Shown: piece by piece, positions 3,001-62,269 of the stretch
Layout of the letters: each line of letters begins with the position of its first letter
Position numbering within the stretch: the stretch's first letter is position 1
Virus record (IMG/VR): IMGVR_UViG_3300032322_001765
Coordinates: 124,001 to 188,000 of that record
Strand: one strand, 5' to 3'
DNA: 64,000 bases
The notes under the pieces: model-generated
Told to the model about the DNA's origin: nothing
Databases searched by the model: none
The model's input: the letters and a program-made list of their open reading frames with translations, nothing else
Made by a program: the position numbers and the translations under genes

Positions 3001-6000
3001 ACTTAGGGACTCAAGGTTCAACTCTCACCGCTGATTTAGATGGGTATTTGTCTAATGTGAGAATAGTTAAAGGAGTTGCGGTATACACAAGTAGTTTTGT
3101 TGTGCCAACAAGTCCGTTGACCGCTATATCTGGTACTAGTTTGTTGACATGTCGTGATATAGGTTCAACAACAATATTCAATAAGTTTTCAGCAGGAGCA
3201 GCACACACTTTAATTAGAAATAGTGCTAGTACACAGGTATCTGCATTTGGGCTTACTACATCTGGACAACTTGGTTTAGGTGATACAATTAATAGATCAA
3301 GTCCTGTTATAGTAGGTAGTGGTACTCAAATCAATACTTACACAAATAGTCCTGTTCTAGTAACACCAGGTACTAGTGGATATACACAAGTATTTGCTGG
3401 ACAAAGCTTTAGTGTTGTAAAAAGAACTGACGAAGTTTATGTGTGGGGACTCAATAGTTCAGGTCAATTAGGTGACAATTCAATTATTAACAAATCAAGT
3501 CCTACGTTACTAAGTGCTGGCACAAACTTACAAATTGTGGATCAAAGTAATAGTGGCTTCTCAATTTTACGAAATGGTACTGGATACTCTACTACAGTAG
3601 TACCATTTGCAGGCGCGATATCTGGTTATTTTGGTGGTTCTCCTAACGGATTGCAGGTTGTAAACGCAAATCAATTAGATTTTGGAGTAGGTGATTTTTG
3701 TATGGAATGTTGGATATATCCAACATTATCATATTATCCTCTATCTGGTGTCTTCATGTCACATGGACAGTATAATGGATCAGGCTACTATATAGGTATG
3801 TCATGCTATCAAGGAAACATTAGAGTAGCTATAAGTAATCCCAATACAACACTTACTACTACTGTAGGTGTGACTCCGTTTACCGCTAATACGTGGTATC
3901 ATGTTGCAGTTATTAGAAACCAGTCTACTGTATTACCCTCAACAATGAATATGTATGTTAACGGTACAATTATTGGTTCTATAACCAATACAAATAATTA
4001 TGATTCAGTAGCAAATGAAGGAATAGGTTCTGCTTTTGCAGGAAGTGGGGCAAGGTCACCATACTATTATTTTACTGGATACATTAGCAATGTTCGTATT
4101 GTCAAAGGAAATTATGTTTATGGTGGTAATGGTGCCGTTGGTAATTTCACGCCTCCAACAAGCCCATTAGCAAAAACACAATCAGCAGGTACAAATATAA
4201 ATGCTATAACAGGTAACGAAACTTCCTTATTGATTTACAACACACCTAGTTCGGTAACAGAAGTAAGTGAAGGTTTCAATTTAATTAGTGCTGGTTATAC
4301 ACATGTTACTTCTGTATCAAGCAATAATAAATTATATGCATGGGGATTAAACTCTAGTGGACAATTTGGTACTGGTAATGCAGTAACGTATAGTTCTCCT
4401 GTGCTTGTCGGTAATAGTCAAATAATTAATACTGGTACATTAAGTCCGGTGCAAGTGAATTTTGGATTGCCGAATAGTTGGGCTAGTGTTGCAGCAGGAC
4501 AATCATTTAGTATGGTTCGTGCATTTGATGGTAGTGTTTATGTTTGGGGATTAAATTCCTCAGGACAATTAGGACAAAGTGATTCGATTAATAGATCGAA
4601 ACCAACGTTGGTTGGTGGTCAATTAAATGCTGTATTGGATGTTAGTTCAGCAGCAAATACAATTACTAAATATGGAACCACATATACTACAACAACTGTA
4701 CCAACTGCAGGAAGTGTTGCCGGATATTTTAATGGTGTTAGTGATTATCTAAGATGTGATGCTGCTTTATCTGGTCTGACAACTACTACTGCTCAATTTA
4801 CAATTGAAGGATACGGTAATCCATCAACTTACAGTGGTTTTGCAAACGGTAGATTTATGATTGGCATCAACTCAAAAAGTTCAGGAACTAATAATTTATT
4901 AATAGGCGTAGATAGAATCTATTATAATGGAACAGAAATATCAAGTCTTAGTTTGCCATTAAACACTTGGACACATTTTGCGGCTACTTTTGATGGGACG
5001 ACATTCAGATACTTTATAGGAGGTGTTGAATCGTATTCAGAAGTTGCTGCACCTCAAACAGCATTTAGTAATAATGTATTTTTAATAGGAACAGAGGCTG
5101 ATGCTGCCGACGGAGGAACGTTAGGTAATTATTTACAAGGATATTTGTCAAATATTAGAGTAACACCTCAAGCGTTGTATACAGGTACATTTACGCCTCC
5201 TACTGGTATTTTGACAACATCAAGCGTAGGGACTTCAGGTCCAAATGTTGCTGCAAGTTTATCAGGAACAGTTTCGTTCTTAACATATACGACAGCTGCC
5301 GCTACAATCGATGGGGCACAACCGTTTTATCAATCGTCTATAGCTGCAGGCGCAACTCATTCAACAACTGTAAATGATTTTAATATTCTTTATGCATGGG
5401 GAGCAGGAGGGTCTGGTCAACTTGGAACAAATGCGATTAATAATTTATCAAGTCCGGTAGTGGTTGGTGGACAAACGAATGCTGATTTTAGAAGTCCAAT
5501 ATTAGCGGCATCAGGTAGTTGGTCAAGTGCAAGTGCAGGTGCTAGCCATAGTTTAGCAATAAAGGTCGATAATACATTGTATGGTTGGGGACTTAATAAC
5601 GCGGGTCAACTTGGATTGAATAATACAATTGATAGATCAAGTGTTACACAAATTGATACAACAGATGCTTATGCTTCTGTGAGTGCGGGTAGCAGTACAT
5701 CAATGGTAATTAAGTTAAATAATTTGCTTTATGCAACAGGTTTGGGTACTTCAGGGGTATTGGGTACAAATACTGCAATTAATAGAAGTAGTTTTGTTCA
5801 AGTTGGGTCAAATAGTTGGACTTTAGTATCAACTGGACTTACGACTTCAATGGGTATTGATTCAAATAACCTCTTGTATAGTTGGGGAGCAACAACACTA
5901 GGTCAGTTAGGCTTAAGCACAACTACTCCTGCTAGAAGTAACCCAACATTAGTACAAGGTATTAATCATCAAACAAAATCACCAACTTTAGTTGCAGGAA

Positions 6001-7904
6001 GTTGGAATGCAATTAACGCAGGATTATCACATACTGCTGCATTAAGAAATGCACAACTTTATACATGGGGACTCGCAACTTCAGGCCAAATTGGAAATAA
6101 TTCTGTTACAAACAGATCAAGTCCAGTTTTAATAGGAGCCGGACTAGTAACAATTGTAGATATAAGTTCTTTTAGTAGAACCATATCTACTAGTGGTAGT
6201 CCATACTCACAAAACATTGTAATACCTTTTGCAAATACATCCTCAACTAGTTTTGATGGGAGTTCAGATAATGCATTCTTTGCTTTAACCTCCTCCTACT
6301 GGGATGCAGACTTCACTATTGAATTTTTTATAAAAACTACGGACACAAAGTCACCTGCAGTAATTTTTAGTAATTGGTTTGACTCTAGCTTTTTAGGTGG
6401 TTCTTTTTCTTTGAGTATCTTCTTAGGACAAGTTCGTGTTTCTCATTATCAAAGTAGTGGAACAAATCAAACACAATTTATATCCACAGCAACATCTGTT
6501 AACGACAATAATTGGCATCATGTTGCATTTACTCAAGTACAAGGTATTAGTACTAAAACTTTTCGTATTTTTATTGACGGAATATTAAGTGCGTACAATG
6601 TTCAAACTACTTGGACGCAAGGAAGTTCAAACCCTAACAGCTACATTGCGTCACAAAATCCAGGAACATTTGGTGTAGCAAGTAGATATTTTAATGGATA
6701 TCTTTCTAACTTTAGATTAGTAACTTCAGTAGTTTACTCTACTAGTAGTACGACTATTGGAGCAACAATATTTACGCCTCCATCAAATGCTTTAACCAAT
6801 ATATCAGGAACTCAAGTATTAATTATGGTTCAACCTGTTACTGGTTCGGGTGGCTACAGTTCTACATTTGCAGGTTCGGCAACTACTTATGCTATTCGTG
6901 ATGACGGTAACTTATATGCATGGGGTTTAGGAACTACAGGACAAATAAGTGGCTATGAACAAGCAATTAATAGATCCAATCCAAACCAAATAGGTAATAA
7001 TTATCTTAGTGTCAATCAAAGCAGTCCGGTTTTAATTGCTAGTGGTAGTTGGAGTAAAATAGGTGCTGGTGCTAGTGTAAGTGCAGCTATACGCAGTGAT
7101 GGGTTGCTATTTACTTGGGGTTTGAACACATCAGGCCAAATGGGTGATAATACAGTAATTGCTAAATCAAGTCCTGTACAAATTGGTAATAGTAGTTGGG
7201 CACAAGTAAGTGTAATTGATAACCATATGATAGCTTTGGATACTGCTAGTTCAGCATATACATGGGGATTAAATGCTAGTGGTCAATTAGGTGATGGTAC
7301 TACAATTAATAAAAGCAATCCTGTGTTATTGGGTAGTTTTACCACAATCGCCGCCGGTTCCTCATTTACAGGTGGTATTACTAATACAGGTGCTTTGTTC
7401 ATGTGGGGTGTAGGTGCACTCGGGGTTCTTGGCAATAGTGCAACAATTAATCGTTCAAGCCCAATACAAATAGGAACAAGTAGTTGGACAGCTATAGCAG
7501 CAGGAGCAAGCGTTGCTAGTGCAATCAGAAGTGACGGTAGCATATTTAATTGGGGAGCAGGCACTTTAGGTCAATTAGGTCAAGCATATTCTATTATATC
7601 ACGTTCAAGCCCAATACAATTAGGAAATGAGTATGCGGTTGCTAACGTGTACATACCAACAAAAATTGATGGTGAGTTGGGTACAACGTCTTGGTCTTCA
7701 GTGAGTGCAGGAAATTCATATTCAGCAGGAATTTCAAATAATAACTCTTTATTCTTGTGGGGATTAAATAACGCCGGCCAAATAGGACTGAATGATACTA
7801 TTAATAGATCAAGCCCAACTCAAGTAACCGGTACTTATTCGGAAGTTAGTGCTGGTAATTCGTTTACAGGCGCTAGAGCTATTATATATCCAACATCACA
7901 ATAA
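3..7904 (+). CDS. Giant RCC1/BLIP-II repeat protein with five inserted LamG (concanavalin A-like) domains; probable virion fibre/adhesin; 5'-truncated
   Basis: Frame is open from base 3 (INNSSLLFVWGVNAAFQLGTG...), so the TTG start at 315 is an artefact. Many LxxWGxNxxGQLGxGxxxNRSSPVQ repeats; five F(T/C)(I/M)E...W(Y/H/T/Q)H...GY(L/I)SN(V/I/F)R LamG modules. Confidence 0.9.
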   Translation: MNNSSLLFVWGVNAAFQLGTGNTVSRSSPVQIATGTSYSIISAGPTHAVAIDTTSKLWTWGQQSSVGIDVNSWTQVSIGNQFVLAIRNDGRLFAWGVNSSGQLGLGDTILRSSPVLVGNNSWSAISAAIGGNNSAGIASDGKLFTWGNNNTGQLGDGTTINKSSPVQISSGSSFSLVAAGPGFLLAASTNYALFTSGGNSVGQLGDGTTINKSTPVQITDPSVQSWIFISAGTSYSGGIDNLGKLYTWGTNFLGILGHGDTINRSKPTIVSGSTSWSKVSAGGVNTLGITNLGALYAWGQNNVGQIGDGTTINKSSPVQIGSSSWSAVAASDSVSMAIRSDNTLWTWGHNSVGQLGIGLTTNRSSPVQVVAGAQWSSIASSGNNTMVAISIATGTSNKLYLWGFNASGQLGTGDTVNRSSPTLLAGTTGTVIPTKILNYQSFSQVSTGISYTIAKRANDNVLMGWGINTSGQLGDNTATQARRSNPTLIGYRTFVDASENNITSVTFTGSPKNVDFSPFANQPYNTVTSGGSTQFSGLGDVINCGTNSVFAFGTGPFCIEFWCYNNILKAVAAVTTNPSVTSVTDSFIVGWDAAGSYNVVVGNTTFASSPGFIKTNVWQHIVCCRDSSNNVAVFIDGVRGSPGVVASNLVRTTLGIGDFPTTPSQNIDGYLSNVRLVKGSSVYDPTLSTLTVPTSPLTAIANTVLLTCQTFGTAYTGNISALGSTSVFGNSNSQLYVTGLAASGQLGDNTTINKSSSVQLGTGYVGLNTNYNTPTLISNQSWSSVSAGTSYSLALRNDNSLFAWGLNSSGQLGVSNAVARGFPTQITNNSSTFTDNSTNNFTITPNLYARMVNFTPFATVPYDTSVYGGSGSFISNDTYVSIASNAAFDLPGDFTIELWFYLNFPPVANSVMLLDRWVTGVAGSYQLYYRGTGRSITFLVDSATVLLQDPSPDTILPNVWYHVAVVRNGVGSNNVTLYINGLPKISATYTSSLTTSNTLYLGTQGSTLTADLDGYLSNVRIVKGVAVYTSSFVVPTSPLTAISGTSLLTCRDIGSTTIFNKFSAGAAHTLIRNSASTQVSAFGLTTSGQLGLGDTINRSSPVIVGSGTQINTYTNSPVLVTPGTSGYTQVFAGQSFSVVKRTDEVYVWGLNSSGQLGDNSIINKSSPTLLSAGTNLQIVDQSNSGFSILRNGTGYSTTVVPFAGAISGYFGGSPNGLQVVNANQLDFGVGDFCMECWIYPTLSYYPLSGVFMSHGQYNGSGYYIGMSCYQGNIRVAISNPNTTLTTTVGVTPFTANTWYHVAVIRNQSTVLPSTMNMYVNGTIIGSITNTNNYDSVANEGIGSAFAGSGARSPYYYFTGYISNVRIVKGNYVYGGNGAVGNFTPPTSPLAKTQSAGTNINAITGNETSLLIYNTPSSVTEVSEGFNLISAGYTHVTSVSSNNKLYAWGLNSSGQFGTGNAVTYSSPVLVGNSQIINTGTLSPVQVNFGLPNSWASVAAGQSFSMVRAFDGSVYVWGLNSSGQLGQSDSINRSKPTLVGGQLNAVLDVSSAANTITKYGTTYTTTTVPTAGSVAGYFNGVSDYLRCDAALSGLTTTTAQFTIEGYGNPSTYSGFANGRFMIGINSKSSGTNNLLIGVDRIYYNGTEISSLSLPLNTWTHFAATFDGTTFRYFIGGVESYSEVAAPQTAFSNNVFLIGTEADAADGGTLGNYLQGYLSNIRVTPQALYTGTFTPPTGILTTSSVGTSGPNVAASLSGTVSFLTYTTAAATIDGAQPFYQSSIAAGATHSTTVNDFNILYAWGAGGSGQLGTNAINNLSSPVVVGGQTNADFRSPILAASGSWSSASAGASHSLAIKVDNTLYGWGLNNAGQLGLNNTIDRSSVTQIDTTDAYASVSAGSSTSMVIKLNNLLYATGLGTSGVLGTNTAINRSSFVQVGSNSWTLVSTGLTTSMGIDSNNLLYSWGATTLGQLGLSTTTPARSNPTLVQGINHQTKSPTLVAGSWNAINAGLSHTAALRNAQLYTWGLATSGQIGNNSVTNRSSPVLIGAGLVTIVDISSFSRTISTSGSPYSQNIVIPFANTSSTSFDGSSDNAFFALTSSYWDADFTIEFFIKTTDTKSPAVIFSNWFDSSFLGGSFSLSIFLGQVRVSHYQSSGTNQTQFISTATSVNDNNWHHVAFTQVQGISTKTFRIFIDGILSAYNVQTTWTQGSSNPNSYIASQNPGTFGVASRYFNGYLSNFRLVTSVVYSTSSTTIGATIFTPPSNALTNISGTQVLIMVQPVTGSGGYSSTFAGSATTYAIRDDGNLYAWGLGTTGQISGYEQAINRSNPNQIGNNYLSVNQSSPVLIASGSWSKIGAGASVSAAIRSDGLLFTWGLNTSGQMGDNTVIAKSSPVQIGNSSWAQVSVIDNHMIALDTASSAYTWGLNASGQLGDGTTINKSNPVLLGSFTTIAAGSSFTGGITNTGALFMWGVGALGVLGNSATINRSSPIQIGTSSWTAIAAGASVASAIRSDGSIFNWGAGTLGQLGQAYSIISRSSPIQLGNEYAVANVYIPTKIDGELGTTSWSSVSAGNSYSAGISNNNSLFLWGLNNAGQIGLNDTINRSSPTQVTGTYSEVSAGNSFTGARAIIYPTSQ

Positions 7905-53672: not shown

Positions 53673-54659
53673 CTATTCTGTTAACTTGCATTTTGGTATT
53701 TTGCTATCTGCCGAACTCACACAGCTAGGGGTTATACACTTTTTTGGCGAGCCAAATAATTTAAAACCATCAGTTAATGTTCCTAATGGTTGGTCGTGGC
53801 AACTATAACTTCTTTTAATTTCATCTCCCCGTATTATAACACTTTGATACCCTGAATTGCAATACCAACCTTTAAAATTATTAAAACCAAAAGAATTAAA
53901 TCTTTCTGCTTGGTCAAACAAGTACTCATTGTTGTCTTGGTCATACAAGCTTATTTGATATATTTCTTGCTCCTTTGCCTTTTGGGGGAACCCATTTTGC
54001 ATTATTGCAATCATTTCGTTTGTGTATCCATCTACAATTGCACTGGCGGTGTCGTTACTCTGTGGCTTTAGTGTGACATTGATTCCTTTATCATGAAATC
54101 TATTACACCTATCATACAACTCATAAAATTGATCTGGTACCATAACTTGATTAATGGTTACGTGAACATTTTCTCCCATTAAGAATAAACATTTTTCTGC
54201 AAATTCATTTTCATTCGCAAACTCACTATGATAACTTGCAGTAATTGATTTGCGTTGAAATAGTTCAGTAGACATGCACCAATTTCCCCACCATTTTTTG
54301 CTTGGACTTAAATTAGTAGTCATGTGTATACTTTGGTATGGGGTGATACCATCTTCAAGGTATTTTAATAAAGATAATAAATGTTTATAAGCAGTTGGTT
54401 CTCCGCCACTAAAGGACCAATGAAATTTATTAAATCTATTTTGCCTTGCTTGAGTTTTTATTGAATCTATTGTTTGAATGTATTTTTGAAAATCCGAATA
54501 GTCAGGCGTTTGGCTATTAGCATAAGGCCAACAATAGCTGCACTTATAATTACAGAACCTACCAAGAATCCAACTAATATTAAAGACATCATCTTTTATT
54601 AAAGTTTGTTGACCAAATTTTACTATTTTCTCAAATGGAATTTTTGTAAAATCGATCAT
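53673..54659 (-). CDS. Radical SAM protein with C-terminal SPASM/twitch-like domain
   Basis: CNYKCSYC, SGGEPT, GWYCNSG...SC...CITPSC; start taken at MIDFTK. Confidence 0.92.
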   Translation of the reverse strand: MIDFTKIPFEKIVKFGQQTLIKDDVFNISWILGRFCNYKCSYCWPYANSQTPDYSDFQKYIQTIDSIKTQARQNRFNKFHWSFSGGEPTAYKHLLSLLKYLEDGITPYQSIHMTTNLSPSKKWWGNWCMSTELFQRKSITASYHSEFANENEFAEKCLFLMGENVHVTINQVMVPDQFYELYDRCNRFHDKGINVTLKPQSNDTASAIVDGYTNEMIAIMQNGFPQKAKEQEIYQISLYDQDNNEYLFDQAERFNSFGFNNFKGWYCNSGYQSVIIRGDEIKRSYSCHDQPLGTLTDGFKLFGSPKKCITPSCVSSADSKIPKCKLTE

Positions 54660-56232
54660 ACTGTTCTTTGAGCCAGTCGTAGTCATTTATCCTTTTTAAT
54701 ACTTCTGTATCATTCTTGTTAGCCATCGCAAATTCTTTGCCTGCAATAGCTCCGTCAATTGCAAATTCGCCGTACTTCTTATCTTTGCCTACTGTACACC
54801 AAACGTTTAATCTGTCGTTAGTTTCAATTGAGTTTTGTCTATCAATTATTTGACTTGCTAACTTTACGCATTCTCTAAATGCACTTCGCCATGTATTGAA
54901 TGGATCCGTATTAAAATTAGTATAATTACTTAGTTTAATTACAGGTTCGTATAAATTACTTATACTTGTAGTCATATCAGGTTTATTAGTTTGCATATGT
55001 AACGTGTAGAATCTGGGTAATAGCTTTACACCACCGTACCCATATATTAACCCATTAATTGGATTAACGCTGCGCCAAACTCTAACTTTGGCTTGTTCAT
55101 AAAAAGGTACACTAAAATCAAAAGAAAAATCATCAACTAATGATGCATCGGCATCTACTACCCAAAAATAATCTGTTTTTGCAATCTTAGCAGCAGCAAT
55201 GTGTGCTTGATGTATCCCTGCTATGCCGTCAATTCTTTTTGCTTTTGGATATTTTTTAAGTACTAGTTCAAAATTTTTTTCAGCGTTTGGTTCACCGTAG
55301 CTTATGAATATTACGTCAAATTCACCTGGGTATTTGTATTTTATAAATGTTTCAGGACTTCTTCTGCTTACAGGAATTTCTTCTTTGTATTCTTTGCTAG
55401 CATTTGGTTGAAATACATCTACAATTCTTCCATCATTTGTTATAGAACTTAACGATCTACCTAATCGATTACATTCAAACAATATATCATCTTTATATAA
55501 TTCATACTGAGCTTCAAATAGGTTATCTAAATGTTCAAAATCTTTGATATCCCCTATATTAAAATTTTGTTTTGACAATGCGATATATGCTGCCTGCCTG
55601 GCGCCCAATATAGCCCAAACTCCATTTTCAACGTCTGTGCCTAAATGCATCCATCTCCAAAGTCTTTCATAATTTCTCCAGTTGATTTCTGAAATTTCTT
55701 TTACGAATATATCATTTTCCATACATAGTTTGATGCCTTCCCTAAACCCACTTCTCCAAGCTTGCTTTGGACTTGAATTTATGTTTACATCACTTAAACT
55801 ACGATTTAATTGTAGATAATTTTTAAAATCAAAATCAACACTATTAGGATTGGAGCTGTTTTCATGGGTACGCATAGTTTTCAGTTTTTCTACTGGCCAA
55901 ACTTTGATACCACCGTTACCATACGTATTTCCATTAATGTTGTTTTTACCACTAAAGCTTATTACACTGTCGGATACGTTTACGGTATCGACTAGATTCA
56001 GTTCAATTTGCAATAAATTATCGTGTACGTAGTTATCACCATCAACAATAATAACGTGACTATGATTTTCAACAAGATTTGCAACAGCTTTGTGTGCAGT
56101 GTCGCTTCCCTTTATATTGTCAACACGCAGTGCATTTGGACAAATTTCTAGTAAGCGTAAGTAATTGGCTTCTTTGTTTTCCTCTTGATAACTTAGAAAA
56201 ACGACTGGATAATTTTGAATTTTGAATAGCAT
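54631..56232 (-). CDS. Internally duplicated GT-A-like protein
   Basis: Two copies of V(V/I)F(L/I)SY.E.N...G...AH...VD(G/A)D...N..NG..YG.GG(I/V)K...WRS.FRE..KL. Confidence 0.6.
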   Translation of the reverse strand: MLFKIQNYPVVFLSYQEENKEANYLRLLEICPNALRVDNIKGSDTAHKAVANLVENHSHVIIVDGDNYVHDNLLQIELNLVDTVNVSDSVISFSGKNNINGNTYGNGGIKVWPVEKLKTMRTHENSSNPNSVDFDFKNYLQLNRSLSDVNINSSPKQAWRSGFREGIKLCMENDIFVKEISEINWRNYERLWRWMHLGTDVENGVWAILGARQAAYIALSKQNFNIGDIKDFEHLDNLFEAQYELYKDDILFECNRLGRSLSSITNDGRIVDVFQPNASKEYKEEIPVSRRSPETFIKYKYPGEFDVIFISYGEPNAEKNFELVLKKYPKAKRIDGIAGIHQAHIAAAKIAKTDYFWVVDADASLVDDFSFDFSVPFYEQAKVRVWRSVNPINGLIYGYGGVKLLPRFYTLHMQTNKPDMTTSISNLYEPVIKLSNYTNFNTDPFNTWRSAFRECVKLASQIIDRQNSIETNDRLNVWCTVGKDKKYGEFAIDGAIAGKEFAMANKNDTEVLKRINDYDWLKEQYDRFYKNSI

Positions 56233-56901: not shown

Positions 56902-57005
56902 ATTATTCTAAAGCATACTCAGTGATATAGGGTACAGTCGGGATGCCGTAATGGATCCTTTTAGATGAGCGGTTCAACTCCGTTAATAGTATGTTTCAGA
57001 ATAAT
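56902..57005 (+). ncRNA. Conserved-stem hairpin element, copy 1, containing a tRNA T-arm
   Basis: ATTATTCTAAAGCATACT / AGTATGTTTCAGAATAAT arms; AGCGG-TTCAACT-CCGTT at 56968-56984. Confidence 0.5.
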
Positions 57006-57014
57006 AATTACAAT

Positions 57015-57090
57015 TGGGGATTCGCCAAGTTGGTAAGGCACCGGATTTTGATTCCGGCATTCGGTGGTTCGAGTCCATCATCCCCAGCCA
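57015..57090 (+). tRNA. tRNA-Gln(TTG)
   Basis: Cloverleaf; CCGGA-TTTTGAT-TCCGG; CCA. Confidence 0.95.
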
Positions 57091-57092
57091 TT

Positions 57093-57169
57093 GCCCCAAT
57101 AACTCAGTGGACTAGAGTACTGTGCTACGAACGCAGGAGTCGGAGGTTCGAATCCTTCTTGGGGTACCA
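57093..57169 (+). tRNA. tRNA-Arg(ACG)
   Basis: CTGTG-CTACGAA-CGCAG; CCA. Confidence 0.95.
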
Positions 57170-57229
57170 TTCTTGTTGACTAAATACGTTTGCTTGTTTA
57201 ATATGAGCGTTCTTATACAGGAGGTAAAC

Positions 57230-57301
57230 ATGTGGACTAAACCTACAGCACAGGATATGCGTTTTGGTTTTGAAATCACTATGTATATTGCAAATCGCTA
57301 A
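57230..57301 (+). CDS. pqqA: PQQ precursor peptide PqqA (MWTKPTAQDMRFGFEITMYIANR)
   Basis: 23 aa; W.KP...D.RFGFE.TMY..NR with the ExxxY motif; AGGAGG RBS; hairpin after the stop. Confidence 0.93.
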   Translation: MWTKPTAQDMRFGFEITMYIANR

Positions 57302-57319
57302 TATACAACATTGATGGGC

Positions 57320-57346
57320 AAAAAGGTAGCTATGCTACCTTTTTTT
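57320..57346 (+). terminator. Intrinsic terminator after pqqA (possibly bidirectional)
   Basis: AAAAAGGTAGC-TAT-GCTACCTTTTTTT. Confidence 0.85.
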
Positions 57347-57348
57347 AC

Positions 57349-57424
57349 GGTAGAGTAGCATAGCGGCTAATGCGCCACCTTCATACGGTGTTTATCGTCA
57401 GTTCGAGTCTGACCTCTACTACCA
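57349..57424 (+). tRNA. tRNA with CAT anticodon (elongator Met or Ile2)
   Basis: CACC-TTCATAC-GGTG; paired 1:72; CCA. Confidence 0.85.
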
Positions 57425-57438
57425 ATAAAGGAAATATT

Positions 57439-57591
57439 ATGCCAATGTATGAAACTACTGTTAGAACGCCGAGCGGCGAAGAAAAGAAAAGAATTTATGC
57501 GGATACACCGCAAGAGGCTAAAAAACTTTTTGAACAATTGTATGGTGGGCCTAGAGCAGTTCCATATATACCAAAAATAGTACCAAGTTAG
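57439..57591 (+). CDS. Small hypothetical protein, 50 aa (MPMYETTVRTPSG...)
   Basis: AAGGA RBS; true start lies after the tRNA. Confidence 0.65.
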   Translation: MPMYETTVRTPSGEEKKRIYADTPQEAKKLFEQLYGGPRAVPYIPKIVPS

Positions 57592-57664
57592 GGGGATTAG
57601 TTAAATGGGATAACAACGGCTTTGCAAGCCGTGATTAACAGTTCGATTCTGTTATCCTCCACCA
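57591..57664 (+). tRNA. tRNA-Ala(TGC)
   Basis: G3:U70 pair; ACGGC-TTTGCAA-GCCGT; CCA. Confidence 0.95.
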
Positions 57665-57675
57665 AAACATTCAAT

Positions 57676-57752
57676 GGTGATGGTAGCTCAGTTGGTAGAG
57701 TCCCGGATTGTGATTCCGGTCGTCGTGGGTTCGAGCCCCATCCTTCACCCCA
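57676..57752 (+). tRNA. tRNA-His(GTG)
   Basis: G-1 and C73; CCGGA-TTGTGAT-TCCGG. Confidence 0.95.
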
Positions 57753-57755
57753 AAT

Positions 57756-57833
57756 ACCCTGATGGCGAAATTGGTAGACGCACCAGTTTAAGGTACTGGA
57801 TTGTTGAGAGTTCGAGTCTCTCTCAGGGCACCA
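57756..57833 (+). tRNA. tRNA-Leu(AAG), atypical
   Basis: Leu-type D-arm (GGCGAAATTGGTAGACGC); CCAGT-TTAAGGT-ACTGG; short variable region; A1-C72 mismatch. Confidence 0.75.
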
Positions 57834-57835
57834 AT

Positions 57836-57911
57836 GCCGTTCAAGCTAACCAAGTGGAAGCGTCTGTCTGAAGAACAGAATGGCCTGGAGCGTTACCAGG
57901 GGTCGGCACCA
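57836..57911 (+). tRNA. tRNA-Phe(GAA), atypical T-loop
   Basis: TCTGT-CTGAAGA-ACAGA; T-arm CCTGG-AGCGTTA-CCAGG; CCA. Confidence 0.8.
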
Positions 57912-57915
57912 ATTT

Positions 57916-57944
57916 TTGACAAATATTAAATTATTTGTTATACT
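57916..57944 (+). promoter_or_regulatory. sigma70-type promoter
   Basis: TTGACA-17 nt-TATACT. Confidence 0.75.
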
Positions 57945-57948
57945 TGAT

Positions 57949-58023
57949 GAGTCCTTAGTCTAATGGATAAGATACTGCATTCCGATTGCATTGATGCAGG
58001 TTCGATTCCTGCAGGACTTACCA
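57949..58023 (+). tRNA. tRNA-Arg(CCG)
   Basis: TGCA-TTCCGAT-TGCA; A20 in D-loop; CCA. Confidence 0.88.
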
Positions 58024-58055
58024 AAAGTAAATACTATTTTATATAGGAGATTAAA

Positions 58056-58616
58056 ATGTCTGTCTTAGCTTTGGATATCACAGGAATCCCTAGACAATGG
58101 GTTTCAAACGATATTGCAATCACTTACCATGCAAAAGAGATGGTAGCATGGAGTATTGGTGAAATTGTTGCACGTTATCGTGGTGGCATTCAAAATAATG
58201 GCAAAATGAGTTATCTTGAAACTCCTAGTATTATTGCCATTAAAGGACATGGTTTTGATCCTAGCAAACATGGCAAAGTTGCACTTACTAATAAAACATT
58301 GTTTGGGCGTGACCGTCATGTATGTGCATACTGCGGCGGACATTTTTCGAATTCAAACAACTTAAGTCGTGACCATATTTTACCTAAAAGCAGAGGTGGT
58401 GCAAACAATTGGATGAATGTGGTTACTGCATGTACTCCATGCAATAACAAGAAAGACAACAAAACATTGAAAGAGGCACGAATGGAATTGCTTTATGTTC
58501 CCTATGAGCCAAATTTCTTTGAAGCAATGATTTTGCAAAATAGAAATATTCTCGCTGATCAAATGGAATACTTAATGACAGGTGTACCAAAACATAGCAG
58601 AATTTTGTTATCATAA
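58056..58616 (+). CDS. HNH endonuclease (McrA-like)
   Basis: RDRHVCAYCG, SRDHILPKSRGG, WMNVVTACTPCNNKK; AGGAG RBS. Confidence 0.92.
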   Translation: MSVLALDITGIPRQWVSNDIAITYHAKEMVAWSIGEIVARYRGGIQNNGKMSYLETPSIIAIKGHGFDPSKHGKVALTNKTLFGRDRHVCAYCGGHFSNSNNLSRDHILPKSRGGANNWMNVVTACTPCNNKKDNKTLKEARMELLYVPYEPNFFEAMILQNRNILADQMEYLMTGVPKHSRILLS

Positions 58617-58624
58617 TAAAAACA

Positions 58625-58653
58625 TTGACATAAAATGTTTTGTGTGATATGAT
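58625..58653 (+). promoter_or_regulatory. sigma70-type promoter
   Basis: TTGACA-17 nt-TATGAT. Confidence 0.7.
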
Positions 58654-58672
58654 TGCGTTTAAATAGTTTTAT

Positions 58673-58747
58673 GCTGGCGTGGCTCAACGGTAGAGCAACG
58701 GATTTGTAATCCGTAGGTTGAGGGTTCGATTCCTTTCGCCAGCACCA
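58673..58747 (+). tRNA. tRNA-Thr(TGT)
   Basis: ACGGA-TTTGTAA-TCCGT; CCA. Confidence 0.95.
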
Positions 58748-58753
58748 TTTTAT

Positions 58754-58829
58754 TGTCTAGTAGCTCAGTCGGTAGAGCAGGTGACTGTTAATCACCCTGT
58801 CGTAGGTTCGATCCCTACCTAGACAGCCA
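58754..58829 (+). tRNA. tRNA-Asn(GTT)
   Basis: GGTGA-CTGTTAA-TCACC; G73; CCA. Confidence 0.95.
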
Positions 58830-58853
58830 AACTTCTTGTATTATAGGTATATT

Positions 58854-59048
58854 ATGTTAGTTACTGAAGCACAAGGTTACAAACTTTTCTGTGAAACACA
58901 AAAAATTGATTTCCCGCCGGACACCTATTATGTTCGTATTTTTACCAAATATGAATTTGCTAAGAACTCTGATGCGGAGCAAACTAAGATTGAACTTTTT
59001 CTAACTAAAAGTGAATTAGACAATCTTAGACAAATGCTTACTGTCTAA
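58854..59048 (+). CDS. Small hypothetical protein (MLVTEAQGYKLFC...)
   Basis: AGGT RBS, ATG at 58854; fills the inter-tRNA gap. Confidence 0.55.
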   Translation: MLVTEAQGYKLFCETQKIDFPPDTYYVRIFTKYEFAKNSDAEQTKIELFLTKSELDNLRQMLTV

Positions 59049-59055
59049 TTAATTT

Positions 59056-59130
59056 CTGGCGTTCGTATAAGGGATAATACTACAGACTTCTAATCTGTAA
59101 ATCCAGGTTCGAGTCCTGGACGCCGGACCA
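59056..59130 (+). tRNA. tRNA-Arg(TCT)
   Basis: ACAGA-CTTCTAA-TCTGT; CCA. Confidence 0.95.
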
Positions 59131-59159
59131 AATTATCAAACTAGCAACAAAAATAATTG

Positions 59160-59188
59160 TTGACGATAAATCCTATTTGATGTATAAT
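59160..59188 (+). promoter_or_regulatory. sigma70-type promoter
   Basis: TTGACG-17 nt-TATAAT. Confidence 0.75.
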
Positions 59189-59233
59189 TCTTTTTATCGT
59201 AGTTAATATCTTTAACAATTTAATAACATTTAG

Positions 59234-59309
59234 GCACCCATCGTCTAGAGGCCTAGGACATTGCCCTTTCAAGGCAGTAACACGGGTTCGAATCCCGTTG
59301 GGTGTACCA
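59234..59309 (+). tRNA. tRNA-Glu(TTC)
   Basis: TTGCC-CTTTCAA-GGCAG; CCA. Confidence 0.95.
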
Positions 59310-59369
59310 GTTAATGGTATAACTAACTGTGATACAAGCACAATATGCTTGGTAGATTATACCATACTT

Positions 59370-59446
59370 GCCCACTTAGCTCATTCGGTTAGAGCATCGT
59401 CTTGATAAGGCGGGGGTGCTTGGTTCGATTCCAAGAGTGGGCACCA
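59370..59446 (+). tRNA. tRNA-Ile(GAT)
   Basis: TCGTC-TTGATAA-GGCGG; CCA. Confidence 0.93.
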
Positions 59447-59527
59447 TATTGAAGCACATTATTAGTGACGCTGGGAAGGACAAGATTCAGCGGTAAATAA
59501 ATCCTTCATTAGTGTGTTTCAATATGG
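59444..59527 (+). ncRNA. Conserved-stem hairpin element, copy 2
   Basis: CCATATTGAAGCACATT / AGTGTGTTTCAATATGG, 17 bp with two G-U pairs; begins at the CCA of tRNA-Ile. Confidence 0.55.
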
Positions 59528-59556
59528 TTGACAATAAATCAGTTTGCTGTTAAACT
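59528..59556 (+). promoter_or_regulatory. sigma70-type promoter upstream of the putative ncRNA
   Basis: TTGACA-17 nt-TAAACT. Confidence 0.65.
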
Positions 59557-59569
59557 AGCGGCAAATAAA

Positions 59570-59763
59570 GATTCCGGTTACTACTTTCCTGAAAGTAGCG
59601 TGTGGCGACGATAATTGACCCGGTGGCAGCAAACCGTTAGCGAGGTAACTCCTCAGGCACTGCTAGGCAGAATCCCAACTGCACACAGACACGAGAATAA
59701 ACGGGATGGACAGGGTAACAACTCTGCTAAGGGGCGATGCCTGGAAAACACGTAGCCTTAGCA
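59570..59763 (+). ncRNA. Unrecognised structured ncRNA, copy A
   Basis: GC-rich, non-coding; shares GATGGACAGGGTAACAACTC and the flanking hairpin layout with 60644-60843. Confidence 0.6.
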
Positions 59764-59889
59764 ATATTAGTTTTGCAGTTTGTAAGCACAGAAGCCGGCG
59801 CGAGGCATTATGTAACCAAAGCAATAAACAGTAATCACGTGTAAAGCTGTTGAGCGAGGCATATAGTATAAACTGCAAAACTAATATTG
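59762..59889 (+). repeat. Perfect 20-bp inverted repeat enclosing an 88-nt insert
   Basis: CAATATTAGTTTTGCAGTTT (59762-59781) / AAACTGCAAAACTAATATTG (59870-59889). Confidence 0.85.
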
Positions 59890-59965
59890 GCTTCATAGTT
59901 CAGTTGGTTAGAACGCCGCCCTGTCACGGCGGAGGTCAGGGGTTCGAGTCCCCTTGAGGTCGCCA
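59889..59965 (+). tRNA. tRNA-Asp(GTC)
   Basis: CCGCC-CTGTCAC-GGCGG; G73; CCA. Confidence 0.95.
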
Positions 59966-60047
59966 AACATAGGGTAAACTTCTACTTGCACTTAATTTGA
60001 ACTTAAAGTAAAATATAGGTTCTTTAGTTAAGTCATTGGAGAACAGA

Positions 60048-60251
60048 ATGAATTTGAAATTGAAAGCAGCATTGTATACCTTTCTATATGCATTAACAGG
60101 ATTAGGTGTAGGATTTGTAGTATCACAACTGCCTACTTGGACAGTAGTAACACTTGTGTGTATTTTTGGAATTTGTCTAGCATATATTCTTATACATACA
60201 GGACTAAAATACGATGAAGCAGTAAAAGAAATAAGTAAGAAGTACGAATAA
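60048..60251 (+). CDS. Small two-TM membrane protein
   Basis: GGAG RBS, ATG at 60048; two hydrophobic stretches. Confidence 0.6.
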   Translation: MNLKLKAALYTFLYALTGLGVGFVVSQLPTWTVVTLVCIFGICLAYILIHTGLKYDEAVKEISKKYE

Positions 60252-60259
60252 TGTAGTTA

Positions 60260-60350
60260 GGAGCGTTGGCCGAGTGGTCGAAGGCAGTGGTTTGCTAAAC
60301 CATCGTACATCAAAAATGTACCATTAGTTCGAATCTAATACGCTCCGCCA
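60260..60350 (+). tRNA. tRNA-Ser(GCT)
   Basis: GTGGT-TTGCTAA-ACCAT; long variable arm; G73. Confidence 0.95.
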
Positions 60351-60377
60351 GTTTTCATATTTTATTTAGGAAAGAAA

Positions 60378-60557
60378 ATGAAATATCTTAATTTTGTATT
60401 ACCCGTTATAATCACACTACTTTCAATAATTGGAATTATTGCTAGTTATGGTGCAGGTAACGATTCTGCACTTAGTGCATATGTTGTAGCATTATCAGGT
60501 TGGATGGTAATCGCAACGGATGAAGTTATTAAATTTATTGATAGTCGAAGAAAATAA
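60378..60557 (+). CDS. Small two-TM membrane protein, 59 aa (MKYLNFVLPVIITLLSIIGIIASYG...)
   Basis: AGGA RBS; just under the ORF-track cutoff. Confidence 0.6.
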   Translation: MKYLNFVLPVIITLLSIIGIIASYGAGNDSALSAYVVALSGWMVIATDEVIKFIDSRRK

Positions 60558-60563
60558 ATTTAT

Positions 60564-60641
60564 GCAACGGTGGCAGAGAGGCCCAATGCAAGAGTCTGCA
60601 AAACTCTAAAGCCGTCAGTTCGAATCTGACCCGTTGCTCCA
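60564..60641 (+). tRNA. tRNA-Cys(GCA)
   Basis: AGAGT-CTGCAAA-ACTCT; U73; CCA. Confidence 0.95.
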
Positions 60642-60643
60642 AG

Positions 60644-60843
60644 TATCCCGCAGGCCCTTCTGCGCTATGAAAGGGGGTATATTGGCTTCACCATAACGCC
60701 AGGGCTCTTACGTTGATAGCCTCAAAGCCCGCTTGACATGGGTGATAGAAAAAACGTAGGTGGGTATCACACCTTGCCAGAAGTAAATGTGATGGACAGG
60801 GTAACAACTCAGTAAGGGGCTTATGGGAATAAGTAGCCTTACA
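60644..60843 (+). ncRNA. Unrecognised structured ncRNA, copy B
   Basis: GATGGACAGGGTAACAACTC at 60791-60810, followed by a GTAAGG...CCTTAC hairpin. Confidence 0.6.
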
Positions 60844-60867
60844 CTTTATACTATAGGAGATCCTGTT

Positions 60868-60906
60868 ATGGATAGTGACAAGAGTGACAAGATAATGCGG
60901 GCATAG
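60868..60906 (+). CDS. Putative 12-aa mini-ORF (MDSDKSDKIMRA) overlapping the 5' end of tRNA-Lys
   Basis: AGGAG at normal spacing before the ATG; stop codon falls inside the tRNA. Confidence 0.35.
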   Translation: MDSDKSDKIMRA

Positions 60907-60972
60907 CTCAGTCGGTAGAGCAGTAGACTTTTAATCTATTGGTCGTGGGTTCGAATCCCCCTGCCCGTACCA
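60897..60972 (+). tRNA. tRNA-Lys(TTT)
   Basis: GTAGA-CTTTTAA-TCTAT; CCA. Confidence 0.95.
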
Positions 60973-61050
60973 TATAAAAACACATTCGCTTATATTTTAA
61001 CGGCTTGCAAGGCACGGGCGTATAAGAGTATTGAGTGTGTTTCTATATGG
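60970..61050 (+). ncRNA. Conserved-stem hairpin element, copy 3
   Basis: CCATATAAAAACACATTC / GAGTGTGTTTCTATATGG; begins at the CCA of tRNA-Lys. Confidence 0.55.
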
Positions 61051-61056
61051 TTTATT

Positions 61057-61141
61057 GGGGATGCGGCTAAGTTAGAGAGTGGCGGCGGACTGTAAATCCG
61101 TTCTTTCGGGTGAGTAGGTGCGAATCCTTCCATCCCCACCA
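61057..61141 (+). tRNA. tRNA-Tyr(GTA), atypical D/T loops
   Basis: GCGGA-CTGTAAA-TCCGT; variable arm; T-loop TGCGAAT; CCA. Confidence 0.85.
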
Positions 61142-62160: not shown

Positions 62161-62178
62161 AGTCGTAGGACATTAAGA

Positions 62179-62251
62179 CGCGGGTTAGGGAAGAGGTCAT
62201 CCCGTTAGGCTCATAACCTGAAGATCGTTGGTTCAAATCCAGCACCCGCAT
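62179..62251 (+). tRNA. Initiator-like tRNA-fMet(CAT), no encoded CCA
   Basis: C1-A72 mismatch, purine11:pyrimidine24, TTAGG-CTCATAA-CCTGA, TTCAAAT T-loop. Confidence 0.8.
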
Positions 62252-62269
62252 CTTAGTGTCTTACAATAA

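What the first reader, a model, noticed from the sequence alone, without database searches (positions are those of the whole stretch)
56902..61050. Dispersed family of conserved-stem, variable-insert hairpins attached to tRNAs
Seen: three 17-18 bp stems (56902-57005, 59444-59527, 60970-61050) sharing AA(G/A)CA(C/T)A(C/T)T on the left and AGT(G/A)TGTTTC on the right, with unrelated 68, 50 and 45 nt inserts. Deviations are mostly G-U, which favours a plus-strand RNA structure. Two begin at the CCA of the preceding tRNA and would sequester it; copy 1 holds a canonical T-arm. Inference: a processing or protein-binding stem that releases variable small RNAs (antisense guides, decoys or decayed tRNAs), or that controls tRNA 3' maturation.
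Basis: partly seen in the sequence, partly recalled or inferred. Interest (0 to 1): 0.65.

Follow-up and report, generated by a model that had tools for sequence, protein, structure and literature searches.

The report
Phage tRNA-array hairpin RNA cassettes
An apparently undescribed family of RNA hairpins, with a nearly invariant 18-bp stem and freely swapped inner sequences, sits between the tRNA genes (mostly right after tRNA-Lys) of giant T4-like lake phages, probably as processing handles that release small RNAs.

Summary
The window holds three hairpins (56902-57005, 59443-59528, 60969-61051) with a shared stem and unrelated inserts. A probable fourth, diverged copy encloses a whole CCA-less tRNA-Met (62165-62264).

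The hairpins belong to a large family. I found about 260 copies (220 unique) in 135 IMG/VR phage loci that carry 1,949 tRNAs. The consensus is ACCAUAUW-R-AAACACAUU [11-184 nt insert] AGUGUGUUUC-WAUAUGGU.

- **Structure:** 12 of 18 stem pairs covary. The tRNA-sense strand scores 13-21 bits better than the antisense strand.
- **Placement:** copies lie only inside tRNA arrays. 44% start exactly at an upstream tRNA's CCA, and 67% of tRNA-Lys(UUU) genes are followed by one.
- **Inserts:** they fall into 169 unrelated types and swap between near-identical flanks. About 18% carry a T-loop motif.
- **Distribution:** absent from Rfam, from 50,697 cultured phage records, from T4, and from real bacterial chromosomes.

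Best reading: these are sense-strand RNA cassettes in polycistronic tRNA transcripts. The two-turn stem would be a processing handle (host RNase III type plus RNase P) that frees the flanking tRNA ends and releases a variable small RNA. No cleavage or RNA data exist, so the mechanism is inferred.

The parts
56902..57005 (+). Hairpin copy 1. It belongs to the subfamily with outer stem UAUUCU/AGAAUA. The insert is 68 nt and has a T-arm next to the right arm. It is the first element of the tRNA array, 10 nt before tRNA-Gln.
   Evidence: 40.2 bits, E 3e-9. The same outer-stem variant is seen in L038, L065 and L073.
59443..59528 (+). Hairpin copy 2. Its left arm starts at A73-CCA of tRNA-Ile. All 18 pairs form, two of them G.U. 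The 48-nt insert is the same insert type as L016:10615-10698, which there follows tRNA-Glu.
   Evidence: 58.2 bits, E 9.6e-15
60969..61051 (+). Hairpin copy 3. Its left arm starts at A73-CCA of tRNA-Lys(UUU), and the right arm ends 6 nt before tRNA-Tyr. It carries the family's typical A.C site and U.G pair.
   Evidence: 58.7 bits, E 7e-15
62165..62264 (+). Probable diverged copy. A 14-bp stem with the family core (two compensatory double changes) encloses tRNA-Met 62179-62252. That tRNA has a C1.A72 end and no encoded CCA.
   Evidence: and reading of the sequence. It is not found by model R1, so membership is tentative. A parallel case is L022:1163-1268, which encloses a tRNA-like RNA.
59370..59446 (+). 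tRNA-Ile(GAU), whose CCA forms the first pairs of copy 2.
60897..60972 (+). tRNA-Lys(UUU), whose CCA forms the first pairs of copy 3. This is the tRNA most often followed by the element across the family.
61057..61141 (+). tRNA-Tyr downstream of copy 3. RNase P cleavage at its 5' end would free the 3' side of the hairpin (inferred).
   Evidence: inference
59528..59556 (+). Sigma-70-like promoter (TTGACA-17-TAAACT) that starts inside the last bases of copy 2. Such a promoter is present next to only about 3% of copies, so it is not part of the element.
   Evidence: reading

Best explanation
The hairpins are modules of the polycistronic tRNA-array transcript, acting as RNA on the tRNA-sense strand. 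Each consists of a nearly invariant two-turn closing stem of about 18-20 bp. The stem has a tolerated A.C/G-C site in the middle and a conserved U.G pair next to the insert. It presents a variable inner RNA, the cargo. The outermost pairs are borrowed from the neighbours: the CCA of the upstream tRNA pairs with U-G-G, whose GG is often the first two bases of the next tRNA. I infer that the stem is a processing handle. A double-strand-specific cut (host RNase III type) in the stem, together with RNase P at the downstream tRNA and 3' trimming to CCA, would separate the flanking tRNAs and release the capped cargo as a small stable RNA. Shown: the existence of the family, strand, covariation, placement, cassette exchange and phage-only distribution. 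Inferred: transcription, cleavage, the nuclease, and any function of the cargo. Cargos turn over by recombination within the conserved arms between co-infecting phages.
For: - **Stem covariation:** 92% of cells are paired versus 85% when shuffled. 12 of 18 pairs change on both sides (0 of 500 shuffles reach this). Slid controls give 30-58%; one search repeats this on 135 sequences.
- **Strand:** model scores are 13-21 bits higher on the tRNA strand. G.U outnumbers A.C 118 to 29 outside the two conserved odd sites. At the position not constrained by my search pattern the counts are CG 134, UG 21, UA 16, CA 0. Orientation matches the tRNAs in 285 cases against 63.
- **Placement:** 116 of 262 copies start at a tRNA's CCA, and 42 end in the GG that begins the next tRNA. 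Filled versus empty sites show that CCA and UGG belong to the tRNAs. One copy is the intervening segment of a permuted tmRNA. Four copies stand in tandem between tRNA-Lys and tRNA-Tyr.
- **Helix length:** median 19 bp, and 42% are 20 bp or longer, which is RNase III substrate size by established knowledge.
- **Location in genomes:** copies are confined to the tRNA array in five whole records.
- **Cargo:** GC is 47% versus 40% in the loci, and T-loop words are enriched 4- to 20-fold. In cargo stems, 29 changes preserve pairing and 9 break it.
- **Precedent (my knowledge):** the T4 tRNA precursor is opened by host RNase III, and T4 encodes stable RNAs in its tRNA cluster.
Against: - No RNA reads exist for this phage, so neither transcription of the hairpins nor any cut is shown.
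- RNase III needs little sequence, so it does not explain why 17 stem positions are 85-100% identical across diverse phages, or why an A.C mismatch is kept in about half the copies.
- No RNase III gene is found in the window's record or in five large relatives, one of them complete, so only a host enzyme could act.
- Cargos folded alone are barely more stable than shuffles (mean z -0.6).
- A mini-version with a 9-nt loop exists, so the cargo may be dispensable.
- The strong preference for tRNA-Lys(UUU) is not explained by a generic processing role.
Confidence: 0.45

Rival explanations
1. The stem is a sequence-specific handle for an unidentified, probably phage-encoded, RNA-binding protein or nuclease. 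The family would then be a platform that displays hypervariable small RNAs, including tRNA mimics. These could act as decoys or sponges against host tRNA-targeting defences.
For: - The stem sequence is near-invariant and keeps its A.C and U.G sites.
- The family is phage-only: absent from 185,579 species' genomes except three short tRNA-rich MAG contigs.
- There are 169 cargo types, with cassette exchange between near-identical flanks.
- Some cargos are tRNA-like.
- The element is tied to tRNA-Lys(UUU), Glu(UUC) and Gln(UUG). By my knowledge these are the s2U34 tRNAs attacked by anticodon nucleases such as PrrC and the PARIS effector.
Against: - No candidate partner protein was found. The gene families most often co-located (an unknown PHROG, a metallophosphoesterase, dCMP deaminase, HNH) occur in at most 33 of 135 loci, and the commonest is absent from this record.
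- No anticodon-loop mimic word is enriched in the cargos.
- Mini-hairpins without cargo exist.
Confidence: 0.2
2. The hairpin is only an inert, self-folding spacer. It keeps neighbouring tRNAs from misfolding or stabilises transcript ends. The inserts are junk, such as decayed tRNAs and filler, and nothing functional is released.
For: - Cargos alone are not markedly structured.
- Cargos are unrelated at orthologous sites.
- Some are tRNA remnants.
- A 9-nt-loop version exists.
- The element also serves as the linker in a permuted tmRNA.
Against: - A spacer needs no conserved sequence, yet the stem is near-invariant across very different phages.
- Cargo GC is raised, and compensatory changes occur in several cargo types.
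- Tandem arrays of four hairpins are hard to explain as spacers.
- A blunt, stable hairpin would block 3' trimming of the upstream tRNA unless something cuts it.
Confidence: 0.15
3. The element works at the DNA level. The inverted repeats would be ends of a miniature mobile element or recombination sites (MITE-like, attC-like or PeSL-like) that shuffle cassettes in tRNA arrays.
For: - The same flanks carry different inserts in 10 of 29 contexts.
- The same insert sits in different contexts for 36 of 51 insert types.
- HNH endonuclease genes are common in these arrays.
- Similarity of related contigs breaks at the arm boundaries (weak evidence).
Against: - Orientation is fixed to the tRNA strand.
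- The G.U excess is on the sense strand only.
- There are no target-site duplications at filled versus empty sites.
- No two copies in one genome share a cargo.
- There are 1-5 copies per genome, all inside the tRNA array.
- No GTTRRRY core is present.
- A promoter is adjacent in only about 3% of copies.
- Exchange is explained well enough by homologous recombination in the arms.
Confidence: 0.1
4. The element is a regulatory lock on tRNA 3' ends. Pairing of CCA delays maturation or aminoacylation of particular tRNAs, above all tRNA-Lys(UUU), until the hairpin is removed.
For: 44% of copies begin exactly at CCA. 67% of tRNA-Lys(UUU) genes are followed by one, and 26 of 38 independent Lys lineages.
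Against: - 56% of copies do not follow a tRNA. Some are first in a transcript or stand in tandem.
- Only three of about 18 pairs involve CCA.
- Variable cargos are unnecessary for a lock.
Confidence: 0.1

Closest known systems
RNase III processing stalks (stems flanking bacterial 16S/23S rRNA, T7 early-RNA sites, the RNase III site that opens the T4 tRNA precursor)
   Same: A two-turn helix is formed by sequences that flank a structured RNA inside a polycistronic stable-RNA transcript, next to tRNAs. The helix contains an internal non-Watson-Crick site, as many phage RNase III sites do.
   Different: Here one stem sequence is reused in hundreds of copies with different contents and is conserved at the sequence level. 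Cleavage is untested. No RNase III gene is found in the phage records searched.
T4 rnaC and rnaD (species 1 and 2 stable RNAs in the T4 tRNA cluster)
   Same: Small non-tRNA RNAs encoded inside a T4-type tRNA cluster, of unknown function. rnaC has a T-arm next to the 3' strand of its closing stem, as about 18% of the cargos do.
   Different: There is no sequence or structure match to model R1 in the T4 region (best 8.8 bits, E 1.1). T4 has single genes, not a family with a shared stem.
Y RNAs / bacterial YrlA
   Same: The architecture is a conserved terminal stem plus a variable module that can mimic tRNA. YrlA-like RNAs are also known from phages (my knowledge).
   Different: Rfam YrlA does not match the hairpins. 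The only hit is 25 bits over two ordinary tRNAs, against a gathering score of 69. The stem sequence is unlike the Ro-binding helix. No Ro-like gene was recognised next to the array.
PeSLs, the mobile promoter-stem-loop cassettes of T4-type phages (PMC2839356, PMC4122927)
   Same: Conserved short motifs in T4-type genomes at which modules are exchanged by recombination.
   Different: PeSLs are a short stem-loop plus an early promoter. They act as direct repeats around ORFs in hyperplastic regions. Here the conserved parts are the two arms of one long hairpin around a non-coding insert, only in tRNA arrays, and a promoter is adjacent in only about 3%.
Integron attC sites
   Same: Imperfect inverted repeats with conserved arms, conserved unpaired bases and a variable central part of tens of bases, associated with cassette exchange.
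   Different: attC acts as folded single-stranded DNA with R boxes (GTTRRRY) and an integrase. Neither the R box nor strand-neutral evolution is seen here.
Intervening segments of permuted (two-piece) tmRNA genes
   Same: One family member is exactly such a segment, linking the CCA end of the acceptor piece to the 5' end of the coding piece (L003:14023-14116).
   Different: Known intervening segments have no shared motif with tRNA spacers (my knowledge).

Membership tests
Any Rfam 15 family | Covariance-model match at or near the gathering score | tested here: not met
   nothing over the hairpins except miRNA-precursor-like hits of 14-26 bits, far below gathering scores.
YrlA / Y RNA | Match to RF02553 including the Ro-binding helix | tested here: not met
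   the only hit (25.3 bits against 69) lies on tRNA-Thr and tRNA-Asn, not on a hairpin.
YrlA / Y RNA | Ro60/Rsr gene in the same genome or next to the RNA | tested here: inconclusive
   The adjacent 533-aa ORF (54631-56232, - strand) has no PHROG, NCBIfam or PDB match. The rest of the genome was not scanned for a TROVE domain.
RNase III processing stem | Helix of about two turns (about 20 bp) formed by flanks of a structured RNA | tested here: met
   median 19 bp, 79% are 18 bp or longer, 42% are 20 bp or longer. Stems enclose the cargo or a whole tRNA.
RNase III processing stem | Staggered double-strand cleavage by RNase III | not testable with these tools
   No RNA runs were found. An enzyme assay is needed.
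PeSL mobile regulatory cassette | Early promoter joined to a short stem-loop | tested here: not met
   a promoter-like site lies next to 9 of 256 copies downstream and 7 of 256 upstream (background 1.3%).
PeSL mobile regulatory cassette | Many copies dispersed in hyperplastic regions around ORFs | tested here: not met
   1-5 copies per record, all within a few kb of the tRNA array.
MITE / transposon with terminal inverted repeats | Target-site duplication, both orientations, near-identical copies in one genome | tested here: not met
   no duplication at filled versus empty sites; orientation tied to the tRNAs; 169 insert types, none repeated within a genome.
Integron attC | R''/R' boxes RYYYAAC ... 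GTTRRRY | tested here: not met
   The consensus arms read ...WRAAAC... / ...GTTTCWA..., which do not fit the boxes.
T4 rnaC/rnaD-type stable RNA | Encoded within a T4-type tRNA cluster on the tRNA strand | tested here: met
   (T4-like baseplate, portal and gp46-like genes).
T4 rnaC/rnaD-type stable RNA | Sequence or structure homology to rnaC or rnaD | tested here: not met
   best R1 score in the T4 region is 8.8 bits (E 1.1).
T4 rnaC/rnaD-type stable RNA | Accumulates as a discrete stable RNA | not testable with these tools
   No RNA data.

The most novel reading that the evidence does not exclude
The conserved stem is the docking handle of an unknown phage factor, and the family is a modular, horizontally exchanged library of small RNAs. 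The library includes tRNA mimics and is expressed from tRNA arrays. It would serve as decoys or sponges against host defences that attack tRNA-Lys(UUU), Glu(UUC) and Gln(UUG). This would be an RNA-based counter-defence system with integron-like cassette turnover.
Probability: 0.13. Interest if true: 0.88.

Novelty: new variant of a known kind. Interest (0 to 1): 0.68.

Why it matters
Large tRNA arrays are a hallmark of jumbo phages, but how their long transcripts are cut up, and what the non-tRNA stretches in them do, is largely unknown. The two stable RNAs in the T4 tRNA cluster are still unexplained after 50 years.

This family gives a sharply defined, widespread motif. It comprises hundreds of copies, strong covariation, one fixed stem, and a marked preference for tRNA-Lys(UUU). 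That makes the question directly testable with one transcript and a few purified RNases.

If the stem proves to be a specific handle, it would define a new RNA-protein pair and a natural scaffold for expressing arbitrary small RNAs. If the cargos matter, it would be a new kind of rapidly exchanged phage RNA arsenal.

Tried and rejected
- **Rfam** at permissive thresholds: no family matches.
- **YrlA:** rejected; its only hit lies on ordinary tRNAs.
- **Antisense-guide idea:** the three cargos have no match longer than 12 nt (E at least 0.37) anywhere in the 221-kb record.
- **Phage-encoded RNase III:** none in this record or in five large relatives, one of them complete at 355 kb.
- **Neighbouring 533-aa ORF as a Ro-like partner:** no family or PDB match.
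- **Co-located gene families:** none is common enough to be a partner. phrog_11311 is absent from this record.
- **Cultured phages:** no hairpin in 50,697 records and none in the T4 tRNA region.
- **Bacterial and archaeal genomes:** 73 pattern hits, about the chance number. Only three short, tRNA-rich MAG contigs carry the full stem.
- **Promoter, terminator or PeSL reading:** a promoter is adjacent in about 3% of copies, and no U-tract follows the stem.
- **MITE or attC reading:** no target duplication, fixed orientation, no R boxes.
- **CRISPR-repeat mimicry:** AUUGAAAC/GUUUCAAU occurs in the arms of only a minority of copies. It was judged coincidental and not pursued.
- **Codon mimicry:** position 0 (RAA) does not track the upstream tRNA's identity (seen).
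- **Reads:** only DNA contigs were available. They were dominated by cross-matching tRNAs and gave no useful joints beyond similarity breaks at 59510 and 61051.
- **Late-promoter resemblance** (TATAAAAA versus TATAAATA): inexact and present in only half the copies.

Full report
**What is in the window**

The window lies at 124,001-188,000 of a 220,867-bp IMG/VR virus record that CheckV rates 61% complete. The record has T4-type baseplate, portal and gp46-like genes and giant ORFs of up to 5,694 aa. A complete relative is 355 kb. From 57,015 to the window's end, 26 or more tRNA genes lie on the + strand.

They fold better than shuffles on the + strand, with z of -2.5, -5.2 and -5.6. They are the only exact matches to the right-arm consensus in 64 kb.

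Copies 2 and 3 start at the discriminator-CCA of tRNA-Ile and tRNA-Lys. Copy 1 precedes the first tRNA and holds a T-arm.

I found a probable fourth relative at 62165-62264. A 14-bp stem with the same core, two compensatory double changes and the same two G.U positions encloses tRNA-Met 62179-62252. That tRNA has a C1.A72 end and no CCA.

**The family**

- An invariant 20-mer from a neighbouring RNA fetched 18 related loci.
- In these 135 loci (1.2 Mb, 1,949 tRNAs) I located 262 copies, 220 of them unique.
- The consensus is ACCAUAUW-R-AAACACAUU, an insert of 11-184 nt (median 49), then AGUGUGUUUC-WAUAUGGU.
- The outer CCAUAU/AUAUGG part was not in any search pattern, yet it is 75-95% conserved.

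On an alignment of 48 copies with unrelated inserts, 92.1% of cells pair, against 85.0% when shuffled. Twelve of 18 pairs change on both sides (0 of 500 shuffles reach this), and slid controls give 30-58%. An alignment of 135 distinct sequences gives the same picture.

A covariance model (R1) finds 354 matches at E of 1e-3 or better in 100 loci, counting both strands.

A second outer-stem type, UAUUCU/AGAAUA, is related to the main type by compensatory changes. Window copy 1 belongs to it.

**RNA or DNA, and which strand**

- R1 scores are 13-21 bits higher on the tRNA strand at essentially every site.
- Outside two conserved odd sites, the sense strand has 118 G.U against 29 A.C. At the one position left free by my pattern the counts are CG 134, UG 21, UA 16, CA 0.
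- The two odd sites are a mid-stem position that is A.C (72), G-C (58) or A-U (17), and a U.G pair (133, otherwise C-G 32) next to the insert.
- Whole-record scans find copies only inside the tRNA array: 3 in this record, and 1, 2, 4 and 5 in four large relatives.

Together with the fixed orientation (285 same, 63 opposite, the latter mostly near-palindromic double calls), this argues for a transcript-level element. It argues against a dispersed DNA repeat.

**Relation to tRNAs**

- 116 copies begin exactly at a tRNA's CCA.
- 18 more follow a T-loop-bearing RNA that ARAGORN does not call.
- 8 follow another hairpin, and 114 have other contexts, a few directly after a promoter.
- In 42 copies the last GG of the right arm is the first GG of the next tRNA.

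Comparing filled and empty sites in close relatives is informative. One pair reads ...ACCA-GUUUA-UGG-tRNA (empty) against ...ACCA-[hairpin]-UGG-tRNA (filled). The comparison shows that the CCA and UGG pairs are supplied by the flanking tRNAs. The element proper replaces a 4-5-nt spacer, without target duplication.

One copy is the intervening segment of a permuted tmRNA, joining its CCA end to the 5' end of the coding piece (L003:14023-14116). Elsewhere, four copies stand head to tail with 3-nt gaps between tRNA-Lys and tRNA-Tyr (L020:289-701).

The element is selective about its upstream tRNA:

| tRNA | Genes followed by a hairpin | Lineages (92% identity or more) with a hairpin |
|---|---|---|
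| Lys(UUU) | 61 of 91 (67%) | 26 of 38 |
| Glu(UUC) | 16 of 100 | 9 of 49 |
| Gln(UUG) | 12 of 74 | 7 of 47 |
| Asp | 0 of 85 | 0 of 38 |
| Pro | 0 of 79 | 0 of 42 |

Every other tRNA species is at 7% or less.

**The inserts**

- The 265 inserts fall into 169 unrelated clusters.
- 10 of 29 contexts with the same flanks on both sides hold more than one insert type.
- 36 of 51 multi-member insert types occur in more than one context.
- In L011 and L016, whose flanks are more than 95% identical, the hairpin after tRNA-Glu has a different inner stem and insert. After tRNA-Lys, L011 has only a 15-bp mini-hairpin with a 9-nt loop where L016 has a 51-nt insert.
- The insert of window copy 2 recurs in L016 after a different tRNA.
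- Inserts are GC-richer than their surroundings (47% against 40%).
- GGTTC occurs in 31 of 169 types (7.4 expected) and GGTTCGA in 13 (0.6 expected), often 13-17 nt before the right arm, which is where a tRNA T-arm would sit.
- 16 types match tRNA segments, and two stems enclose complete tRNA-like RNAs.
- Among close variants, 29 predicted insert pairs change while keeping the pair and 9 break it.
- Inserts folded alone are only slightly more stable than shuffles (mean z -0.6).
- The window's inserts have no antisense match above chance in the phage record.

**Distribution**

- No Rfam family matches.
- No hairpin occurs in 50,697 cultured-phage records or in the T4 tRNA region.
- In 596 Gb of prokaryote genomes the core pattern occurs 73 times, about the chance number. 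Only three short MAG contigs, carrying 5-21 tRNAs each and evidently phage fragments, have the full stem.
- Sequencing runs that hold this stretch are lake or freshwater DNA metagenomes. No RNA run was found.
- Three searches of about 8 million papers found no description of the motif, including one for the stem sequences.

**Mechanism**

Shown: a phage-specific, sense-strand hairpin family with a fixed two-turn stem (median 19 bp). It sits in tRNA operons, bridges tRNA ends, and undergoes cassette exchange.

Inferred: after RNase P cuts the downstream tRNA, the hairpin's 3' end is base-paired. It would therefore block the exonucleases that normally trim a tRNA back to CCA, so an endonuclease must act on or beside the stem. 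Host RNase III is the simplest candidate, given the helix length and the T4 precedent. I hold this at 0.45 for four reasons:

- RNase III does not explain the sequence invariance, the kept A.C site or the tRNA-Lys preference.
- No phage RNase III gene exists in the records searched.
- A mini-hairpin without cargo exists.
- No RNA data exist.

The rivals are a specific protein handle displaying variable RNAs (0.2), an inert spacer with junk inserts (0.15), a DNA-level recombination element (0.1) and a CCA lock on tRNA-Lys (0.1). These partly overlap with the best reading.

**Comparison with known systems**

The element works most like rRNA and phage RNase III processing stalks, and like the T4 stable RNAs rnaC and rnaD. 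It shares the stem-plus-module plan of Y RNAs and the cassette behaviour of PeSLs and attC sites. It fails the membership tests for each of these that could be run. I therefore rate it a new variant of a known kind (structured non-tRNA modules of phage tRNA operons), not a member of any described family.

**Limits**

- Most loci were ascertained with one exact core pattern, so core conservation is overstated. The outer stem, the strand bias at free positions, placement and cargo diversity are not affected.
- Orthology and lineage independence were handled only by clustering.
- The host is unknown.
- All functional steps are inference.

Noticed in passing
window 59575-59760 and 60642-60860; L003-L020: A second, unrelated structured RNA of about 200 nt occurs twice in the window. 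Both copies contain the invariant 20-mer GATGGACAGGGTAACAACTC, which is also found in 18 IMG/VR contigs. In an alignment of 13 sequences, 10 of 29 predicted pairs keep pairing through changes on both sides. No Rfam match. It often directly follows a family hairpin.
   Followed up: partly
window 57230-57301 (+): A 23-codon ORF with a GGAGG ribosome-binding site sits between tRNA genes and encodes a PqqA-type precursor peptide (MWTKP...EITMY...). It matches TIGR02107 at 39.5 bits against a cut-off of 20. A cluster of at least six radical-SAM/SPASM genes lies just upstream of the tRNA array (42.5-54.7 kb).
   Followed up: partly
window 59762-59889 (+): Another long hairpin with 23-nt arms (96% complementary) and an 82-nt insert ends exactly at the first base of tRNA-Asp. 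Its stem sequence is unrelated to the family.
   Followed up: no
window 60868-60906 (+); L011:3154-3192, L016: A Shine-Dalgarno-like site is followed by a 12-codon mini-ORF (MDSDKSDKIMRA) whose stop codon lies inside the 5' end of tRNA-Lys. It is conserved almost base for base in L011 and L016, so it may be an RNA element and not a peptide gene.
   Followed up: no
L003:13937-14332: A phage-encoded permuted (two-piece) tmRNA gene with tag ATAANDEIFALAA. Its intervening segment is a member of the hairpin family.
   Followed up: partly
window 58056-58616 (+); 19-20 related loci each for two clusters: Free-standing HNH endonuclease genes sit inside the tRNA arrays, recalling the homing endonucleases in the tRNA regions of T4 and T5.
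   Followed up: no
L082:4166-4393 and 16 other loci: A 76-aa ORF in the tRNA arrays scores above the NCBIfam cut-off for RNA polymerase subunit omega (TIGR00690, 28.6 bits against 23.6).
   Followed up: no
window 62179-62252 (+): This tRNA-Met(CAU) has a C1.A72 mismatch like bacterial initiator tRNA, but it lacks an encoded CCA. By contrast, 1,890 of 1,946 tRNAs in the related arrays encode CCA.
   Followed up: no
G000:C1:26932-44013, 118327-131901 and others: The record has giant ORFs of 5,694, 4,525, 2,642, 1,981 and 1,830 aa. The window's first ORF (3-7904) is the end of the 4,525-aa one.
   Followed up: no
L042:7524-8108 and 28 other loci, including this record's tRNA region: A metallophosphoesterase of about 195 aa (phrog_547, weakly PdeM-like) is the most frequent annotated protein gene beside these tRNA arrays. 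It may be an RNA-end healing enzyme.
   Followed up: no
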